From Octopus bimaculoides (lineage: Eukaryota), in assembly GCF_001194135.2 (NCBI RefSeq), contig NC_069000.1:37539318-37592784 (forward strand): a stretch of DNA of 53,467 nt, written 5' to 3'. Position 1 is the stretch's first letter. Every line of letters begins with the position of its first letter. The notes beneath the pieces are model-generated. The model saw only the letters and a program-made list of their open reading frames with translations. It was not told the DNA's origin and searched no databases. Positions 14,099 to 50,690 of this stretch are shown one piece after another. The position numbers and the translations under genes are program-made.

Positions 14099-16789
14099 AT
14101 GTTAAATTGGTGGTCGTTGGTGTTTATGGTGTTATTAGCTGTATCGAACTGTCAAGATCTCACGTATACAGTAATGGAAGGTGAAAAACCAGGAACTTAC
14201 CTTGGAAATATAGCTTTTGATACGAGTCTCATGAAAAATGTTCAGACAGAGGAAATGAATCTGAGATTTATTCTACTAAAACCAGCACATTCCACTGAAC
14301 ATCAACAATTGTTTAAGGTTAATGAAAAGACTGGTAAATTCTACACAGCACAAGTGATTGATGCGGAAGCAGTTTGTACACAAGGGTCAGAATGTTTCCA
14401 AATGGTTGATGTCATTGTTCAGGATGGGGAAGCTCTCTTGAAAATATTGAAAATTAAAATTATCATCGAAGATATCAACGATAACAAACCGATATTTCCT
14501 CGTAGAAATATAAATTTATATTTTTCTGAGGGTGGGAGCGGAATGAGAAAATCAATTCCAAATGCTGTCGACCAAGATATTAGTGAAAAAAATTCAAAGA
14601 TAAGTTATCATCTTCAATCAAAGAATAATGAAACATTTTCATTGATTGTCACAGAGCGAATTGATGGAACATCAAAATTAAGCATCAACGTCAACAAAAA
14701 ACTTGACCGTGAAGTACGAAGTAGTTACGTTTTAGAAATCATTGCACAAGATGGCGGCCAACCGCCTTTACAGACACAATTGAATGTCAATATTTCAGTG
14801 ACAGATGTAAATGATAATGCACCTGTATTCATGCAAGATGTCTATAATGTGACAATCAAAAATGAGTTAAATGAACAGGCACCCATAATCACGGTGTCTG
14901 CAACTGATGCAGATAAAGACGAAAATGGCAAAGTGTCTTATCGATTTAGTTCAAGAACATCAGAAATAACGCTTTCTCATTTTCAATTGAATGAAACTAC
15001 TGGAGAAATATTTTTCCGTCGGATATTTTCTTCAAGTGAAAAATATATGCATTTGTTTATCGAAGCTTATGATGGGGCCAACCCGCCTTTAAGTGTTATA
15101 GGAATGGTACAAGTTAATATACAATACACAACGAACAATCCACCAGAAATAAGGATTAATTTTGTATCTTCTGTAACACCAAACACTGCAATAGTCAGCG
15201 AGGCTATAAGTGAAGGCAGTTTTATTGCTTACGTTCAAGTTTTTGACCATGATGTGGGAAATAACGGACAAGTCAGTTGTAATTTAAGACACGATCATTT
15301 CCAACTTCAGAGCCTCGGGAAAACAGGATATAAAGTTATCGTAAAGAAAAAAATTGATAGGGAAAAAAAAGATAACTTTAACGTCACTGTCACATGTCAA
15401 GATAAAGGAACCCCAGCCTTGTTCACGGATTATTCCTTCTTAATTGAAGTATCAGATATCAACGATAATGCACCATTATTTGAAAAGTCCTCATACGCCG
15501 CTTCTTTCTTTGAAAATAACGTTATAGGTTTATCAATTGTGAAGGTGTCGGCATATGATAAGGACAAAAGGGAAAATGCTCAAATTACTTACTTCCTTCA
15601 ATCTGATTTACCATTTAGCATTGGTAAACTGTCGGGTATTATAAGAGCAAAAACTTCTTTCGATCGAGAAGTGAGCTCTTTTCTAACTTTCCCTGTATTT
15701 GCTAAAGATCAGGGAAATCCATCATTAACTGGCAGCACTACACTTACGGTATCTATCCTTGATGTTAATGATATGTCGCCTAAATTCACACAGCCAACAT
15801 TCGAATTTTCAACTTACGAAAACCAACAACCAAATTTTCCTGTTGGGCTTATAAATGCTACCGATGCCGATCAAGGTTTAAATAGTCAGCTTACTTATTC
15901 ATTGATCAGGAACAAAGGCAGCTTTATTCCTTTTCAAATTTCTAACGATGGATTTCTGTCAGTTGTTCAAGTTCTAGATCGCGAACTCCAGCCAGAATAT
16001 CGCTTCAAAGTTTTAGTCAACGACAAAGGTTCACCAAGTTTAAACAATAGCGTTAATGTCCGCGTAAAAGTCATTGACGAAAACGATAACTCACCGGAGT
16101 TCGTATTCCCGAGTGGAAATAATTTTAGCATGACTGTCTATTATCAACGTTATACCAATAAAGAAATCAGCATTGTGCAGGCGCATGACAATGATGTTGG
16201 CAAAAATGCCGTTCTTCGATACAACATCATTGGAGGAAATGAGAAAAAGTTATTTGACATTGATAAAATCAAAGGATCCATATATTTTGCACGTGCTGCA
16301 ACAGTACAAGACTCCGGTTTGTACAAATTACAACTTGTAGTATTCGATTCTGGTGAGCCTATGAATTCAGCCGAGTCTAATCTTTCATTGAGCATTATTG
16401 TAAACAATGATACTGCATCAATCAACAAAGGTTTTGAACATCACACGGGCATCATGCTACAGCACAATCTCCTAATTGTTATTGTGTTAACGGTTATTAC
16501 GGTATCAGTGGCTGTTATCGTCATAACCACTATTTGTGTCATTCGACGAAATGACATTCGAAATGCGACGACGAATACACAAGTTTCGAATAACAGCGAC
16601 CATTCCCAGACTTTATCAAAACAGTTTACTTTCAATTCGGATCCCTCTTTGAGGGTACCAAAGGGCAATGGTCGACGAAATCGGTGTGGATATAACTATT
16701 CTACGGTGCCAGAGGATCTTGGTCTTGGATGTAACACTTCAGCTATTTCAGAAAACTCTAATCACTCAACGGGAGTCAATAAAGCACAG
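14099..16789 (+). CDS. Protocadherin coding exon 1: signal peptide, 7 extracellular cadherin repeats, transmembrane helix and juxtamembrane tail (897 codons)
   Basis: The ORF has MLNWWSLVFMVLLAVSNC (signal), linkers DINDNKP, DVNDNAP, TTNNPP, DINDNAP, DVNDMSP and DENDNSP, DRE/DxD/xDxG motifs, and TM LLIVIVLTVITVSVAVIVITTICVI (~16469-16543). Acceptor ttttatag|G at 14071/14072 lies 27 nt before the ATG. Donor CAG|GTAAGA at 16789/16790 is phase 0. Confidence 0.96.
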
Positions 16790-16811
16790 GTAAGACTTCA
16801 AAACACGCACG

Positions 16812-16868
<57 letters not shown>

Positions 16869-18162
16869 NNNNNNNNNNNNNNNNNNNNNNNNNNNNNNNN
16901 NNNNNNNNNNNNNNNNNNNNNNNNNNNNNNNNNNNNNNNNNNNNNNNNNNNNNNNNNNNNNNNNNNNNNNNNNNNNNNNNNNNNNNNNNNNNNNNNNNNN
17001 NNNNNNNNNNNNNNNNNNNNNNNNNNNNNNNNNNNNNNNNNNNNNNNNNNNNNNNNNNNNNNNNNNNNNNNNNNNNNNNNNNNNNNNNNNNNNNNNNNNN
17101 NNNNNNNNNNNNNNNNNNNNNNNNNNNNNNNNNNNNNNNNNNNNNNNNNNNNNNNNGACATACCACAACATACACACACCATCTCCACCATCACACACAC
17201 ACACACCATCTCCACTATCACACACACACACACACACACGAGGCCACCACCGCCACCACAGACATACCACAACATACACCATCACGCGCGCGCACACACA
17301 CACACACACATACACACACTAAACCACCACTGCATACACACACCATCACCACCACCATCACGCACGCACACATACACGCAAATAAATAAGCAAATATATC
17401 CATACACACATATATTTGTTTAACTTGGAATCACAAGATCCCGAATTCAAAGGGGACACTTTGCCTGGTGTGCAATTAGAAATTCATTCTCTAACACAAT
17501 AATAACTCTCGGAATGTTCATATACCCCCATTACCTATTTTCTCTCTCTTCGATTGCATTGTCTACATAAACGTATTCGTATACGAACCGCTGTAACTTT
17601 CAGCGCTGGCTCTAAATTCTATAGAAAATTCATAGAGATAAACTTTAAACTGAGAATATCGCACTGCTAACACAAGATAAGACACAATATTGACTTGTAA
17701 ACTTGTAAATATATTTGGTAGTATATTATGGTTGCAAAACGAAATACTGTGTCCTTGCTAGTAATTAAAAAAGTTAGTATGGTTATCAAGAAATTTTTAT
17801 TACTTTAGCTCCATGGAATCGTTTCATTGCTTTACAGTAATTGTATTAACACTTCGTCCGGGAAATTTGCATCGGTTTAAAAAAAAAAAAAAAAGACTTA
17901 AGTTTGTAGATAACAACCAAAATTAACATTGAATGAAAATGGGAATAGACAAATAATAATAATAATAATGATGATGATGATGATGATGATGATACAAAAC
18001 GGTAAAGGAGAAAGGGCAGAGAGATGAATTCGCGAGAGGAAAATGAGTTTGAATGATGTCAATGGTCATTAGTGTTGGTCTATAACAGCGATCCGCATCC
18101 TTTTTTTGCTTAGATTCGGCGGCACACCTAAACTAAAAGTATAGCATTCCAACGGTCCCGCC

Positions 18163-37203: not shown

Positions 37204-37824
37204 TTAAAGTGTTAAAGGATTAAAAGGGTTTAAAGGCTAAAGGGTTAAAATCACATTGGGTAGTTCACTTTATCTTATTTCAGAAAAATTCTGATAATTC
37301 TGTCAACAATTTGAGCATTGGCTAAAAACCAACAGTAAATATACAAATAAACAAATTTTACAATATAACTTCTAACTTTATTTTTACTTTCTATGTGGCT
37401 TCAGCTATTAGACTGTGGCCATACTGGGGCACAACTTTGACCGTTTTAGTCAAACAAATTGACCCCAGTACTTATTTTTTAAATCTGGTACTTATGTTAT
37501 TGGTCTCTTAGGATGAACTGCTAAGTTACAGGGACATAAACACACCAACACTGGTTGTCAAGCTGCAGTGGTCAAACAAGCACAAACAGAAACACACATG
37601 CATACACAATAAACTTCCACACATTTTCCATCTACTAAATTCACTCCCAAGGATTGGTTTATCCAGGGCTATAGTAGAAGACACTTGCCCAAGGTATCAT
37701 GCGGTGGGACTGAACCTGAAACCATGTGTTTACAAAGCAAGCTCCTTAACCACACAGCCATGCATGTAGCAACTATTCAATATGAATTTAACCAAATTTC
37801 TATCTTTTTTTTCTTATTTTGCAG

Positions 37825-38354
37825 GTATGGCTGAAAACGTCACCCCATCATCACAGTGTGCAATACCATTATTAAACTGTCGTCAAAAAAGTAATACAGT
37901 TCCTGTTTCATTCACATCTCGAGAAAATGGTTTCAAACCGAACCAAAGGAGTTCCTTCAAACCGAATTCTTCATCGCAAAATTCCCCCATGAATAATTTA
38001 AGATCTAACCATCACTCTCTGTCAATGTATCCCAAAATACAACAACAAGAAAGCACTTACCAAAAAAGTCCTTACTCTACCTCACAGCAAGTCCAGCCTC
38101 CTCATACGCCATACTCACTTGTTGCCATTCCTATCAGAACAATTCCAAACAAACTGCATTACTCATTAGTACAACCGCAATTAATGCCAAAACAACAAGT
38201 GGTAAGTTGTGGCGCTAATTTATCTCAAGCTGAGACTTCATTTTGTGAAAACCAAAGTTCTTCATCAACTGATAGCTGTCATTTGTTAGATGATATAAAA
38301 AAACATTCATATAGTGATCGCAGCAATTTCATACTAAAGGATGTCATTGTATGA
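37825..38354 (+). CDS. Protocadherin terminal coding exon 3: S/Q/P/N-rich tail ending ...FILKDVIV*
   Basis: Long polypyrimidine acceptor tttttttcttattttgcag|GT. The phase-1 join A+GT=Ser continues in the frame of the 37782..38354 ORF. Stop TGA at 38352-38354. Confidence 0.82.
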
Positions 38355-38510
38355 ATGAAGACACTGCTGTTGATTTCTGTTGTATTGTAATTTGGTGATA
38401 ATTTTGCAATATAAATGTCGAACTGTGCCATAAATGTACAGAGTTTACTCTACGAAGGCTGTTATTTTCTGTGTGAACCAAACAAGTGGCTGTGGCAGTT
38501 TCCTGTCACC

Positions 38511-38516
38511 AATAAA
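38511..38516 (+). promoter_or_regulatory. Candidate polyadenylation signal of the protocadherin (alternatives at 39312-39317 and 39664-39669)
   Basis: AATAAA 157 nt after the stop. Position only, with no transcript support. Confidence 0.4.
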
Positions 38517-38883
38517 CAATGGATTTGCTATTCAGAAAATTTGCTCACTTCAATAACTGGACCATTTTCAGAAGAAGAAAAAAAAAATTAGTAATAAAAT
38601 TATACTGAGGTACATGGATTGAGATGATTTCATGCTGCTGTTTGGATACAGACAATTTGGCATGGCTGATTGGATGTTCAGCCTGTTTTGGTGACAGAAC
38701 TTTTTTTGGTGGTGGAAGCAAACACGGACATGTGTGCACATCTACAGAAATATACACATAGAGAAAGGGTGAGAGGGAGAGGAAGAGAGAGAGAGAGAGA
38801 GATTACAGTTTATTAACTGGACATGATTAACATAAAGGCTTTCCCTCTCATATACATAAATAGAAATATGCTCACACACATAA

Positions 38884-38924
<41 letters not shown>

Positions 38925-39784
38925 GGGAGAGAGGGAAAGAGAGAGAGATTCATTCAATTTATTACTTGAACACAATTGACACAAACCTTTTCCCTCTCCT
39001 CATACACATAAAAAAAAATATCCCCATACACATTAACAGAGAGGAAGGGAAAAAGATGAAGGTGAGAGAGGAGAGAATGAAAGAAACTTTAAAATGAGTG
39101 AAACATTAAAATGTTTGATGTCAGGTAAGTCTGCTCTGAATCAGCAACACCAAATAAGCAAGGCCAAATTGGCTGTGGCAAAACGTATCTTTTGAGTTAT
39201 TCTTCAAAGTATCCAGGCTCCTTAAGAATCTTTGATGAGGTATTTTGAACTTGGCAGGGCCTATCTCCATATTTAAGTAACCCTTTCTAATTATGCAGGC
39301 ATATACTCCTAAATAAACAACCTCTTACAACCTGGAGAAATTAATGTTTCATTGGAATTCCATGATGTTGAAAATAATTTGAAATGAAAGAAGAACAGTC
39401 ATGTTCAAAACAAAAAAAACAAATCACTTCCTAAAAATGGGGAAAAACCATACAAGGCTACCAGTGACTGGAAAATATTAAGGATCTTTGTACAGAGTAG
39501 AAAAAGCAAAAGTAGATAAGTTTCAATACTAATTTTCCGGAGACTGATAGTCCAGAACCATTTATAATTTGCATTAATTTATGAACAGGATTTCCAAATT
39601 TCTGCTGGTGCCAGGCTAGTTTACTGGGCGGCCCTGTTTCTCAGTACTTTGATGAACAGTATTAATAAACTTATTTTTTAACAAGCTCTCTGGCTTATCG
39701 CAGCAACAACACCTGTTATGATGTTGTTTTTCTATATATTGCTGGCAGGGATATGAATCACTACTATTTCTAGCAGTCAAGCAC

Positions 39785-39831
39785 CCATCACTGATGAGAC
39801 CAAAGAAGGTCGAAATCACATGATCTGGTGG
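39785..39831 (+). ncRNA. Type I minimal hammerhead ribozyme motif (Penelope-like-element style)
   Basis: ccatca-CTGATGA-gacc aaagaa ggtc-GAAA-tca ca tga-TC-tggtgg. Stem I 6 bp with one G-U, stem II 4 bp closed by G-C, stem III 4 bp and near-palindromic, AUC cleavage triplet. All conserved core nucleotides are present. Confidence 0.8.
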
Positions 39832-39956
39832 TCTTGGCACTGGTGAGGGGGGATTTATCTCCCTGCTAGCAGTATAAACAAGTGTGTATTTTGCCCCAAA
39901 AGCCAATATGAGAGTTTCTCTTATGTCGTCTACCACAGTATATTTTGTTCTAACAG

Positions 39957-40072
39957 TATCCCCATTTAAATGTGGATGTTCTCATCATCATCATCATCAT
40001 CATCGTTTAAAGCGGACGTTAAACGATGATGATGATGATGATGATGAGAACATCCACATTTAAATGGGGATA
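39957..40072. repeat. Perfect inverted repeat, 54-bp arms and 8-nt spacer, centred on an RTE 3' terminus
   Basis: 39957-40010 is the exact reverse complement of 40019-40072, including 7 CAT/ATG units in each arm. Confidence 0.95.
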
Positions 40073-40403
40073 AATACCACTTCTCTGTATTAATACTGTC
40101 TCTGTTGCAAATATATTTTTATATTAAGGTACAGGTACTTGTATTTCATTTAACTCTTAAAGTAAATTAAATATTTGCTTAATTCAGAGGTGACCACTCC
40201 TGGTTTGGAAAACTCAGGGAGAGATTTGGAACCAATGGTTCTGGAAAATTGGTGTTCGGTCCATCTTCATTACTCTTAAATTTAAAATTCTAACTTCCAC
40301 ACCCTTCCGTGATTTAGGATTGATCTAGAAGTGATTATCTCCCTTACAGTAACTGCTGACCAGGCACTGCATGTTCAGACTATTGATAATATTGCATAAA
40401 ACA

Positions 40404-40888
40404 GAGGCGGTTAGCTGGCAGAAACATTGGCACACCGGGCGAAATGCTTAGTGGTATTTCATCTGTCTTTACATTCTGAGTTCAAATTCTGCTGAGGTCG
40501 ACTTTGCTTTTCATCCTTTTGGGGTTGATAAATTAAGTACCAGTTGTGTACTAGAGTTGATCTAATCAACTGGCCCCCTCCCCCAAAATTCTGGGCCTTG
40601 TGCCAAGAGTAGAAAAGAATAAATATATATATATATATGGGGAGGGGGCCAGGCGTGCTGGCAGGAACATTAGCCCACCGGGTGAAATGCTTAGCAGAAT
40701 TTTGTCTGTCTTTATGTTCTGAGTTCAAATTCTTTTAATGCCCAGACACTTTCCACCGAGGTTGACTTTGCCTTTCATCCTTTTGGAGGGGATAAATTAA
40801 GTACCAGTTGCGTATTGGGGTTGATCTAATCGACTGGCCCCCACTCCCCCCAAATTTCGAGCCTTATGCCGATGGTAGAAAAGAATCT
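40404..40888 (+). mobile_element. Second SINE-A dimer flanked by a 12-bp direct repeat
   Basis: Two head-core-tail units. ttgcataaaaca at 40392-40403 and 40889-40900. Confidence 0.8.
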
Positions 40889-41727
40889 TTGCATAAAACA
40901 ACAATTGTTTTGTTTTTGTTAGATCTTTTATAGAATCCTACTTAGGTCCATTTATGCTGAAGTTCTTTGGACACAAGAATGACTGAGGAAGCATTGTAAC
41001 ATAATTTGCAATATTATCTTATGAAATTATAAGTAAAAAAAACTTGATGAGATCAGGTCTCGGGACTTCACAGACAACACATCAGGCCTCAAAAGCAAGA
41101 TAGTAGAGGACCAAAATGAATGGCAATCTGGGAAACTTCCAGATCCATTCGCCCGCAAACCAACATGGAAAAATAGGCAGTGCGATGGTTATATATATAT
41201 TTTGCCTTTTATTTTTTACTTGTTTCGGTCTTTGGACTGTAACCATGCTGGAGCACTACCATGAAGAATTTTAGTGGACCGAATCGACCCCAGTTCATAT
41301 ATTTTAAGTCTGGTCCTTATTCTGTCAGTCTCTATTGCCAAAGTGGTAATTTACAGGGATGTAAACAAAGTAGTGCTAATTGTCAAGGGGTGACAGGGGA
41401 CAAACGCAAAACAGGAATAGACACACACACTCATAATACACAATGGGCTTCCATACAGTTTCCATCAACCAAATTCACTCACAAGGCATTGGTCAGCCCA
41501 GGGCTGTGGTAGAAGACACTTGTCCAAAGTGCTATATAGTGGGACTGAACCTGAAACCATGTGGTTGCAAAGCAACCTTCATACATGTGTTTGTATTATA
41601 CACACACACACACACACGCATAAAGTAGGCAAAGATAGAGAGAGAGCAAGATAATGACAGTAATCAAAAGATATACAAAGCACATTTCTTTTTCCAAATT
41701 GGGCCTTTGTCAGTAAGGCATCCAAGC

Positions 41728-49708: not shown

Positions 49709-50100
49709 TCACTGTTGCACCAAGAACAGAACAAGCCGAACATTAATGGTTTTCGATGCAAGTAATTTGTTGCATTCAAGAACATCGACTGTGGGTAGTG
49801 TATGGTATTCACTTTCTGTAGAATCGTTTGAGAACTCAAACTCGTAGACATACGGGGTCACGTTCAAATCTCCGTAAGGTCCTTTCAGGGCCATGAACAA
49901 GACTTTCAGAGGATTACTTGTTCGGCTTTTTAGAACCAGTTGGTAACTGAGGGTGCGTTTACTACTGTGAGTTGGATCTTTCTGGTCGTGGTCAACACGG
50001 GCTTTCAAAACCCACTGATGCTGGAAGGATGAGAAACGACTTGTCTCGTAAAAGAGTTTGGTGATGAAATCGTCAGTTCTGAAGGGTCGTAACTGGAGAT
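49709..50100 (-). CDS. CYHR1: CYHR1/ZFTRAF1 terminal coding exon
   Basis: (D)LQLRPFRTDDFITKLFYETSRF...LECNKLLASKTINVRLVLFLVQQ* matches the recalled CYHR1 C-terminus. Acceptor tttattatag|AT at 50101/50100. The phase-1 join G+AT=Asp is in frame with the upstream exon. Confidence 0.92.
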
Positions 50101-50377
50101 CTATAATAAAAAAACAAAACAAAACAAGGAAAAACAAAAACAAACCATTAAATGCAAGACAACAGACATAAAGTAATGTTGCTCCATTACTAGACATGTT
50201 TGCACAAAAGACTGATAATGAAACACATGGCTTGCATGATGGTGACATGTGCTTACAATTATACATGATATCTAGGCAAAGAGACAGCAACACAAACACA
50301 CACACGTACATACATATTCTTTTATTCTTTTACTGGTTTCAGTCAGAGGCTGGGGCCATGCTGGAGTACCACCTTTC

Positions 50378-50690
50378 AGTGTTTTTGGGTCCTCTCTACA
50401 CTGTGAGTTGGACAGAGCTGCTCTTCTTTGTGCTTCCTGCCACAATGTGGGTTCATCTGGGATTTCAGGTAGGACTTTGTCCAAGTGCTTTTTGAAGGTT
50501 TCCATATCTACACCTAGCAAATCTCTGAGGTTGTTTGGCAGGATGTTAAACAGTTGTGGTCCCCTAGAACTCAAACTGTTGCAATACTGGGTCCTAATCT
50601 GAGATGAAGAAGACAGGATCTTTTGTATTATGCAGTGCCATTCAGTTCGGTCGTTGGTTGGTAGAGCTTTTAATTCCAAAGTTGTGTACT
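50378..50690 (-). mobile_element. 5'-truncated CR1/L2-clan LINE 3' end inserted in a SINE-B within the last CYHR1 intron
   Basis: RTQYCNSLSSRGPQLFNILPNNLRDL...FKKHLDKVLPEIPDEP...RAALSNS. SINE-B halves lie on both sides. Confidence 0.75.

What the first reader, a model, noticed from the sequence alone, without database searches (positions are those of the whole stretch)
39785..39831. Intact minimal hammerhead ribozyme downstream of, and sense to, the protocadherin
Seen: a complete type I hammerhead. Stem I is ccatca/tggtgg, then CUGAUGA, stem II gacc/ggtc, GAAA, stem III Atca/tgaU, and AUC with predicted cleavage after 39825. Stem III (atcacatgat) is one CpG-type transition away from the perfect palindrome atcacgtgat. 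Established: Penelope-like retroelements carry such minimal hammerheads with palindromic stem III that cleave best as dimers. Seen: it lies about 1.43 kb after the stop, about 115 nt after an AATAAA (39664), in the interval between two convergent genes, and about 125 nt before a perfect hairpin. Inference: it may be a retained self-cleaving element in a long neuronal 3' UTR, or a co-transcriptional cleavage or termination aid. It could equally be a neutral young PLE relic.
Basis: partly seen in the sequence, partly recalled or inferred. Interest (0 to 1): 0.85.

Follow-up and report, generated by a model that had tools for sequence, protein, structure and literature searches.

The report
Intact hammerhead ribozyme in retrozyme relic
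The self-cleaving hammerhead RNA motif is real and fully intact, but it belongs to one stranded copy of a roughly 370-base mobile repeat (a "retrozyme"), and the matching site in Octopus vulgaris lacks it, so it is most likely an ordinary transposon remnant and not a regulator of the protocadherin gene.

Summary
Window 39785-39831 (+) is a complete type I hammerhead with every core nucleotide intact and cleavage predicted after C39825. Rfam's HH9 model matches 39773-39847 at 34.1 bits (E = 5.5e-7), below its 52-bit gathering score.

It is not a minimal Penelope-type motif. Helix I is 6 bp and continues past an internal loop into about 46 pairs. Helix II is 4 bp and helix III is 3 bp with a 4-nt loop. 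The hairpin 39735-39880 folds at -63.5 kcal/mol (z = -7), with 9 G·U and no A·C pairs.

The motif lies in one repeat unit of about 367 nt (39672-40127, interrupted by an 89-nt palindromic insertion). Three independent Logan loci carry the same family, two as head-to-tail tandems of about 309 and 360 nt, with 31-42% GC. All their ribozyme cores are mutated. This is the non-LTR retrozyme architecture.

At the orthologous O. vulgaris site, window 39682-40790 is missing. No hammerhead is found downstream of the protocadherin in O. vulgaris or Argonauta.

Verdict: a solo retrozyme monomer, probably still able to cleave, with no evidence of host function. It is a new member of a known kind, of low to moderate interest.

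The parts
39785..39831 (+). Hammerhead catalytic domain as reported: helix I (6 bp), CUGAUGA, helix II (4 bp, loop AAAGAA), GAA, helix III (3 bp, loop ACAU), C17
   Evidence: Read directly from the sequence. My descriptor reports helices I/II/III of 6/4/3 bp. Rfam HH9 alignment.
39825..39826 (+). Predicted self-cleavage site, between C17 (39825) and U1.1 (39826)
   Evidence: Position follows from standard hammerhead numbering applied to the alignment. Cleavage itself was not tested.
39776..39838 (+). Full ribozyme, including the internal loop (loop 1 equivalent) and the distal helix I, GUCAAG/CUUGGC
   Evidence: The HH9 model aligns both helix I segments. Pair 39779/39835 is A-U here, G-C in two other copies and G-U in one, which is a compensatory change.
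39735..39880 (+). Long imperfect hairpin (extended helix I, about 46 pairs) with the ribozyme at its tip
   Evidence: MFE -63.5 kcal/mol, z = -7.0, 0 of 200 shuffles as good. 9 G·U and no A·C pairs; the plus strand folds at -63.5 versus -48.1 for the minus strand. Across 5 copies, 84% of cells are paired versus 39-49% with slid partners, and 9 pairs change on both sides.
39672..40127 (+). One unit of a retrozyme-like repeat family: 39672-39956 plus 40046-40127, about 367 nt, interrupted by a palindromic insertion
   Evidence: BLAST to Logan loci L006-L012 covers 39672/39674-39977 and 40049/40059-40122, at about 70-80% identity. In the tandem copies the sequence matching 40122 is followed directly by the sequence matching 39674. 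nhmmer E = 2.9e-88. GC is 38% on the 355 nt measured.
39957..40045 (.). Secondary insertion inside the unit. Together with 40046-40072 it forms the 116-nt palindrome (51-nt perfect arms) made of a SINE head, (ATC)7GTTTAA, and an inverted copy of the unit's own GAGAACATCCACATTTAAATGGGG
   Evidence: Self-BLAST. The other family copies lack this segment.
37796..38354 (+). Last coding exon of the protocadherin; the stop codon ends at 38354 (context)
   Evidence: The ORF translation matches the C-terminus of O. vulgaris P0095, 'protocadherin beta-15-like'. The nucleotide sequence matches the annotated Argonauta cadherin gene in L003/L004.
49709..50134 (-). Last coding exon of the convergent CYHR1/ZFTRAF1-like gene (context)
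   Evidence: ORF translation. 99% identity to the O. vulgaris protein P0001. BLAST to the Argonauta loci.

Best explanation
Window 39672-40127 is a single stranded unit of a cephalopod non-LTR retrozyme. This is a short, non-coding, AT-rich retroelement that depends on Penelope-like elements. Its RNA folds into a rod with a canonical type I hammerhead at one end.

In the family's life cycle, as established for coral, mussel and axolotl retrozymes, tandem copies are transcribed as multimers. Each hammerhead cuts after C17, releasing unit-length RNAs with 5'-OH and 2',3'-cyclic phosphate ends. These are ligated into circles and copied back into DNA by a PLE reverse transcriptase.

The window copy has only one hammerhead, so it cannot release a unit-length RNA. 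Any transcript crossing it should simply be cut once at 39825/39826. Its ribozyme is intact because too little time has passed for decay, not because the host uses it. It lies between two convergent genes and is missing from the same site in O. vulgaris.

Shown: motif integrity, family membership, tandem organisation of relatives, strand-specific covarying RNA structure, and absence at orthologous sites. Inferred: catalytic competence, PLE dependence, the circular RNA cycle and neutrality.
For: - All core positions and all three helices are intact. The HH9 model matches at E = 5.5e-7.
- Three independent loci carry homologous sequence over about 300-350 nt. Loci A and C are head-to-tail tandems with periods of about 360 and 309 nt, 5'-truncated at the upstream end.
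- Unit GC is 31-42%. The published retrozyme traits are 170-400 nt units, GC below 45%, a type I HHR and highly self-paired RNA (PMC7229834).
- The rod structure is specific to the plus strand and covaries.
- No RT or endonuclease ORF lies nearby.
- PLEs are present in O. vulgaris, with 31 families (PMC13282606). A 2026 preprint derives animal retrozymes from PLE pLTRs and reports many monomeric copies.
- O. vulgaris lacks window 39682-40790 at the orthologous site. No hammerhead is found in 10 kb downstream of its protocadherin or in either Argonauta interval.
- Five other family ribozyme copies carry core mutations (G12A, C3U, G8A, helix II deletion) and give no Rfam hit, as expected for neutral decay.
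Against: - Only six family copies were seen, five of them from an unidentified species. Copy number, intact tandem arrays and a matching autonomous PLE in the window's own genome were not examined.
- No RNA data were available, so circular RNAs and self-cleavage are untested.
- The nearest-neighbour MFE prefers a fold that pairs part of the core: -63.5 versus -58.0 kcal/mol for the active fold, and -23.0 versus -17.3 for the 75-nt core region.
- The window copy is the only intact ribozyme of six. This is compatible with neutrality, roughly a 20% chance by my estimate at about 5% lineage divergence, but it does not exclude lineage-specific retention.
- The window copy ends 47 nt beyond the 3' end shared by the three Logan arrays, which I cannot explain.
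Confidence: 0.78

Rival explanations
1. Exapted ribozyme. The hammerhead is kept by the host in a long protocadherin 3' UTR, or just past the poly(A) site. There it cuts the nascent RNA to limit mRNA output or help polymerase II terminate before the convergent CYHR1-like gene.
For: - It is in sense orientation, 1431 nt after the stop codon.
- The ribozyme is intact while all other family copies seen are dead.
- The flank 38355-39677 is 75-98% identical to O. vulgaris in 100-nt bins, apart from one 51% microsatellite bin. Some bins are as high as the coding exon, so a long UTR is possible.
- The preprint notes that the rare exonic retrozymes tend to lie in 3' UTRs.
Against: - The element is absent at the orthologous O. 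vulgaris site, and no hammerhead is present in Argonauta.
- Two conserved AATAAA sites (38593, 39312) lie upstream, and the nearest one (39664) is not conserved.
- The sequence is plainly a transposon unit carrying later junk insertions (palindrome, SINEs).
- There is no transcription evidence.
Confidence: 0.07
2. Solo pseudo-LTR fragment of an autonomous Penelope-like element, left after loss of the RT/GIY-YIG ORF, and not a dedicated non-autonomous retrozyme.
For: - PLE pLTRs carry hammerheads (PMC4209133).
- Retrozyme consensus sequences in Xenopus match PLE termini.
- PLEs exist in octopus.
- PLE insertions often carry inverted or tandem partial copies (PMC8557442).
Against: - Three independent related loci show 309-360-nt units directly abutting each other, or unrelated flanks, with no ORF.
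- The ribozyme has the canonical build, not the min-HHR build.
- No RT-like ORF was found near the motif, and none of the nine large window ORFs scanned matched an RT family.
Confidence: 0.12
3. Chance occurrence of the hammerhead consensus in AT-rich DNA.
For: Relaxed hammerhead descriptors hit random sequence at about 0.3 per Mb per strand, which means thousands of hits in a 2-3 Gb genome.
Against: - The covariance-model E-value is 5.5e-7.
- Helix I extends with z = -7.
- Homologous copies share the motif and its flanks, with compensatory changes.
Confidence: 0.01

Closest known systems
Metazoan non-LTR retrozymes (Cervera & de la Peña 2020, NAR; coral about 230 nt, mussel 350-390 nt, axolotl 330-350 nt)
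   Same: - Canonical type I hammerhead.
- Non-coding unit of about 310-370 nt.
- GC below 45%.
- Head-to-tail tandems in related loci.
- Strongly self-paired, rod-like RNA.
- Co-occurrence with PLEs in the host clade.
   Different: - The window copy is a lone monomer carrying secondary insertions.
- Circular RNA expression is untested.
- In the literature I could search I found no cephalopod retrozyme family described.
- Helix III, at 3 bp plus a tetraloop, is at the stable end of the published range, so monomeric cleavage is plausible.
Rfam Hammerhead_HH9 (RF02275), the conserved intronic hammerhead of amniotes
   Same: Same architecture, aligned end to end: bipartite helix I with an internal loop, 4-bp helix II with an A-rich loop, and 3-bp helix III.
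   Different: The score is 34.1 bits against a gathering score of 52. HH9 is a single-copy, deeply conserved intronic element, whereas this is a repeat-family copy not conserved between octopus species.
Minimal hammerheads of Penelope-like element pLTRs (Cervera & de la Peña 2014; Lünse et al. 2017, the latter from my own knowledge)
   Same: Type I topology, retroelement association, and a near-palindromic helix III (AUCACAUGAU) that could also pair between two copies.
   Different: Min-HHRs have helix II of 7-8 bp, helix I of 4-5 bp and little or no helix III, and they flank an RT-EN ORF. None of these holds here.
Schistosoma Sm-alpha and newt satellite 2 hammerhead repeats
   Same: Repeats of about 330 nt, each carrying a canonical type I hammerhead, dispersed and in tandem.
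   Different: No sequence relationship was tested. The amphibian motifs have 1-bp helix III and need dimers.
Host-gene hammerheads in 3' UTRs (rodent Clec2 discontinuous hammerhead, Martick et al. 2008; from my own knowledge)
   Same: A sense-strand hammerhead downstream of a stop codon could lower mRNA output by self-cleavage.
   Different: Those are conserved across species and lie within mapped UTRs. This one is not conserved, and its transcription is unknown.

Membership tests
Hammerhead ribozyme, type I | Conserved core: C3 U4 G5 A6 N7 G8 A9, G12 A13 A14, A15.1-U16.1, H17 | tested here: met
   All positions are present, with N7 = U and H17 = C.
Hammerhead ribozyme, type I | Three helices around the core, with helix I open-ended | tested here: met
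   Helices are 6+6 bp, 4 bp and 3 bp. Helix I is extended by the flanks. Compensatory changes occur in helices II and III and in distal helix I.
Hammerhead ribozyme, type I | Self-cleavage after position 17 | not testable with these tools
   Needs in vitro transcription or end mapping.
Rfam Hammerhead_HH9 (RF02275) | Score at or above the curated gathering threshold (52 bits) | tested here: not met
   34.1 bits. No hit at gathering thresholds.
Non-LTR retrozyme | Canonical type I hammerhead within a short (about 170-400 nt) non-coding unit | tested here: met
   The unit is about 367 nt in the window and 309-360 nt in relatives. The only ORF across it is a 106-aa antisense ORF whose only clear homologues, of five hits, are three translated copies of the repeat.
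Non-LTR retrozyme | Head-to-tail tandem arrangement (dimers to multimers) | tested here: inconclusive
   Met in related loci A (about 1.5 units) and C (about 1.7 units). Not met in the window, which holds a single unit. Monomers are reported as common.
Non-LTR retrozyme | Low GC (below 45%) | tested here: met
   31-42% in six units.
Non-LTR retrozyme | Highly self-paired (rod-like) RNA | tested here: met
   z = -7 for 39735-39880. The predicted pairing continues out to 39683/39917. Covariation supports it.
Non-LTR retrozyme | Expression as linear and circular unit-length RNAs | not testable with these tools
   No RNA data were reachable. The window ORFs I looked up are not on record.
Non-LTR retrozyme | Co-occurrence with autonomous Penelope-like elements | not tested
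   Literature only: 31 PLE families in O. vulgaris (PMC13282606). No PLE was found in the window.
PLE minimal hammerhead / pLTR | Long helix II (7-8 bp), short helix I (4-5 bp), helix III absent or minimal | tested here: not met
   Helix II is 4 bp, helix I is 6 bp plus its extension, and helix III is 3 bp plus a tetraloop, against the definition.
PLE minimal hammerhead / pLTR | Location in direct repeats flanking an RT + GIY-YIG ORF | tested here: not met
   No such ORF was found around the motif in the window or in the Logan contigs.

The most novel reading that the evidence does not exclude
The intact ribozyme is functionally engaged in the window's species. One version is that it cuts protocadherin read-through transcripts, giving lineage-specific control of 3' ends or termination between the convergent genes. 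Another is that it marks a still-active cephalopod retrozyme family producing abundant circular RNAs, possibly in neural tissue.
Probability: 0.08. Interest if true: 0.6.

Novelty: new member of a known kind. Interest (0 to 1): 0.3.

Why it matters
Retrozymes and their circular RNAs are documented in corals, mussels, amphibians and other animals. I found no description of a cephalopod family in the searchable literature. This locus, together with the related tandem copies, gives a seed for finding the whole family in octopus genomes and for asking whether octopus tissues carry ribozyme-processed circular RNAs.

For the protocadherin gene the result is mainly a caution. An intact ribozyme next to a neuronal gene is not evidence of regulation when the element is a transposon copy that a sister species has lost.

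Tried and rejected
- Rfam at gathering thresholds on the whole window gave nothing. The motif only appears in E-value mode.
- A second copy or partial hammerhead in the window: none by self-BLAST, pattern search or nhmmer.
- Other copies in about 240 kb of O. sinensis, O. vulgaris and Argonauta loci: none by sensitive BLAST. nhmmer gave only a weak fragment at L005 48873-48955 (E = 0.0012).
- Exact look-up of two window ORFs in public assemblies: not on record.
- Homology search with the 190-aa terminal exon returned nothing, although P0095 later proved about 90% identical over it. That was a false negative of the word index.
- P0215 and P0216, the top two hits of the representative search with 22 and 13 matched stretches, looked like translated tandem arrays of the family. 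They lack the ribozyme-derived peptide signature and are Cys/Ser-rich repeats, so I treated them as compositional matches.
- The idea that the window's left flank is a decayed preceding unit, or the unit's 'leader', which would have proved the element ancestral. Local alignment was within shuffle noise. An anchored comparison gave 23-25 matches of 60 against a random 21 ± 2.7, while true leaders share 40-42. Rejected.
- Identifying the species behind SRR11869385-94 from the literature: no paper cites these runs.
- Ancestral perfect palindrome in helix III: not supported by the family alignment.

Full report
**1. The observation**

Reading 39500-40100 confirms the motif.
- Helix I is CCAUCA (39785-90) paired with UGGUGG (39826-31), 6 bp with one U·G.
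- The core CUGAUGA is at 39791-97.
- Helix II is GACC/GGUC with loop AAAGAA.
- G12 A13 A14 lie at 39812-14.
- Helix III is A15.1-U16.1, U-A, C-G, closed by ACAU.
- C17 is 39825, so cleavage falls between 39825 and 39826.

A whole-window Rfam scan at gathering thresholds found nothing. In E-value mode, Hammerhead_HH9 (RF02275) matches 39773-39847 over its full 77 positions at 34.1 bits, E = 5.5e-7, against a gathering score of 52.

Beyond an internal loop, helix I continues with GUCAAG (39776-81) paired with CUUGGC (39833-38).

A stem-aware descriptor of my own finds exactly this site in the window. In Markov-shuffled sequence it finds 0.3 hits per Mb per strand, even at laxer thresholds. The bare sequence pattern, without stem requirements, hits 5 times against 1.1 expected, so the stems carry the signal.

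**2. Context claims**

- The large ORF 14099-17389 is a protocadherin with six cadherin domains.
- The ORF ending at 38354 is its last coding exon. From 'MAENV...' to '...KDVIV' it matches the C-terminus of O. vulgaris 'protocadherin beta-15-like' P0095, which is 94% identical to the large exon. It also matches the annotated Argonauta cadherin gene.
- The motif therefore starts 1431 nt after the stop codon, in sense orientation.
- The convergent gene is a CYHR1/ZFTRAF1-like gene whose last exon ends at 49709 on the minus strand.
- AATAAA is at 39664.

**3. The motif is the tip of a long, strand-specific RNA hairpin**

- 39735-39880 folds at -63.5 kcal/mol, against -36.9 ± 3.8 for shuffles. That is z = -7.0, with 0 of 200 shuffles as good.
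- With the hammerhead fold enforced, helix I runs for about 46 pairs and the energy is -58.0 kcal/mol.
- The 53 pairs include 9 G·U and no A·C. The minus strand folds less well, at -48.1.
- A decaying DNA palindrome should give G·U and A·C equally often, so the structure is constrained as plus-strand RNA.
- Predicted pairing continues more loosely out to 39683/39917.
- The nearest-neighbour MFE pairs part of the catalytic core. The active fold is therefore not the predicted ground state. Catalytic competence is an inference, not a result.

**4. It belongs to a repeat family that occurs in tandem**

No second copy exists in the window or in about 240 kb of other octopod loci.

I then used the antisense ORF that happens to span the element (39616-39936, 106 aa) as a protein query against 1.84 billion representative proteins. 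Three short Logan ORFs (P0217, P0218, P0219) carry the translated ribozyme signature, for example 'PPNQVVLTFLGLLSDG' against 'PPDHVISTFFGLISDG'. The two top hits were compositional repeats and were set aside.

The encoding contigs (L006-L012, runs SRR11869385-94, species unknown) define three independent loci. These align to window 39672/39674-39977 and 40049/40059-40122, with block identities of about 70-80%.

In loci A and C the units abut head to tail. The sequence matching 40122 is followed directly by the sequence matching 39674. The periods are about 360 and 309 nt, and the upstream unit is 5'-truncated.

- The window holds one unit, 39672-39956 plus 40046-40127, about 367 nt.
- Units are 31-42% GC.
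- Across the five aligned copies, 84% of cells in the window-derived structure are paired, against 39-49% when partners are slid.
- Nine pairs change on both sides; only 5 of 500 shuffles reach that. These include pairs in helices II and III and in distal helix I.
- Several G·U pairs are conserved.
- Caveat: the structure was derived from one of the five sequences.

**5. Comparison with what is known**

Canonical metazoan type I hammerheads have helix I of 6 bp, helix II of 4 bp and a short helix III. The minimal hammerheads of PLE pLTRs have helix II of 7-8 bp, helix I of 4-5 bp and essentially no helix III, and they flank an RT-EN ORF (PMC4209133). The window motif is of the canonical type.

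Canonical type I hammerheads in animals sit in non-LTR retrozymes. Their traits are tandem units of 170-400 nt, GC below 45% and highly self-paired RNAs expressed as circles. Mussel units are 350-390 nt (PMC7229834).

A 2026 preprint relates these elements to PLE pLTRs. It reports abundant monomers and notes that the few exonic copies lie mostly in 3' UTRs. PLEs are present in O. vulgaris (PMC13282606).

No searchable paper links retrozymes with cephalopods beyond a passing mention.

On every feature I could test, the element fits a non-LTR retrozyme. Circular RNA expression and the PLE partner remain untested.

**6. Conservation at the orthologous site**

The window is 88-92% identical to O. 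sinensis and O. vulgaris across the CYHR1 side. It runs 75-98% in 100-nt bins from the protocadherin stop to 39677, apart from one microsatellite bin at 51%.

In O. vulgaris (L005), homology stops at window 39677-39682. It resumes inside the 3' part of a SINE, at window about 40790. The junction lies in a TTTT microhomology.

In the window, the SINE1-(TA)n-SINE2 block is flanked by a 12-nt duplication, TTGCATAAAACA, at 40385-96 and 40888-99. Other copies of this SINE do not carry that sequence, so it is a target-site duplication. O. vulgaris keeps only the right copy. At least 40128-40790 was therefore deleted in O. vulgaris.

One 1.1-kb deletion that also removed the retrozyme is the most economical reading. 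A later insertion in the window's lineage, at a coincident breakpoint, cannot be excluded. An attempt to prove ancestry from the left flank failed.

Either way the ribozyme is not shared.
- Rfam in E-value mode finds no hammerhead in the 10 kb downstream of the O. vulgaris protocadherin.
- It finds none in either Argonauta intergenic interval, and my descriptor agrees.
- The AATAAA at 39664 is TATAAA in O. vulgaris, whereas the sites at 38593 and 39312 are conserved.

**7. State of the other copies**

The five other ribozyme copies carry G12A (twice, at the CpG), C3U, G8A, multiple core changes or a helix II deletion. None gives an Rfam hit at E ≤ 1. The window copy is the only intact one.

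At roughly 5% lineage-specific divergence, I estimate about a one-in-five chance that the core and helices escape disruption. Intactness therefore does not require selection.

**8. Verdict**

This is a real, intact, probably cleavage-competent canonical type I hammerhead. It belongs to a lone unit of a cephalopod retrozyme-like family, lying in the intergenic interval downstream of the protocadherin.

'Minimal PLE type', the ancestral perfect palindrome and the 3' UTR or termination function are not supported.

It is a new member of a known kind. Interest is 0.3.

Noticed in passing
window 39957-40072: A 116-nt palindrome with perfect 51-nt arms. The right arm ends in the retrozyme's own sequence (GAGAACATCCACATTTAAATGGGG). 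The centre is the head of an abundant octopus SINE, (ATC)7GTTTAA.., in both orientations. It looks like a SINE insertion into the retrozyme followed by a fold-back inverted duplication.
   Followed up: partly
window 40385-40899; L005 45142-45260: Two SINE copies (about 40397-40622 and 40650-40887), separated by (TA)n, are flanked by a 12-nt target-site duplication, TTGCATAAAACA. O. vulgaris keeps only the last ~105 nt of the second SINE plus the right duplication. It is joined to the left flank through a TTTT microhomology, which indicates a deletion of at least 0.66 kb and probably 1.1 kb.
   Followed up: yes
window 38355-39677 vs L005 43097-45142: The 1.3 kb after the protocadherin stop codon is 75-98% identical to O. 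vulgaris in 100-nt bins, apart from one 51% microsatellite bin. For example, 39190-39389 is 94-98% identical, as high as the coding exon. AATAAA at 38593 and 39312 are conserved. This suggests a conserved long 3' UTR ending before the retrozyme. O. vulgaris has its own SINE insertions right after the 38593 signal and at about 39400.
   Followed up: partly
(window 37782-38354): The word-indexed protein search returned no hit for the 190-aa terminal exon. Yet the O. vulgaris orthologue P0095, found later through the large exon, is about 90% identical over it. That search can therefore give false negatives for low-complexity tails.
   Followed up: yes
L003 and L004 (Argonauta hians, two contigs): The same convergent pair (CYHR1-like gene and protocadherin) occurs on two different Argonauta contigs, with intergenic intervals of 8.5 and 6.8 kb. 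This could be haplotigs or a segmental duplication.
   Followed up: no
L001 5489-7855 and 33545-34526; L002 5050-5950: The 3' half of the same SINE forms satellite-like tandem arrays with a period of about 183 bp in O. sinensis and O. vulgaris, upstream of and inside the CYHR1-like gene region.
   Followed up: no
window 50272-50679 (-): A 135-aa ORF whose translation (..RGPQLFNILPNNLRDLLGVDMETFKKHLDKVLPEIPDEPTL..) looks like the C-terminal tail of a LINE ORF2. It lies in an intron of the CYHR1-like gene. I did not check it against any library.
   Followed up: no
L012 1-25 (reverse complement 1091-1115): The Logan contig ends in an Illumina adapter sequence (AGATCGGAAGAGCGTCGTGTAGGGA). The same loci were assembled from 2-5 runs at 99.6-100% identity, which suggests resequencing of several individuals of one unidentified species. 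That species shares both the retrozyme family and a SINE family with the window at about 70% identity.
   Followed up: partly
L005 48873-48955: A weak nhmmer match (E = 0.0012) to the 3' part of the retrozyme unit, next to (TG)n/(TA)n microsatellites, inside a 1.85-kb O. vulgaris-specific insertion. It may be a family fragment in O. vulgaris.
   Followed up: partly
window 16869-17156 and ten other N runs: The window has 4498 N in 11 gaps. One gap interrupts the protocadherin's large exon, so the 1096-aa ORF is read through unknown sequence.
   Followed up: no
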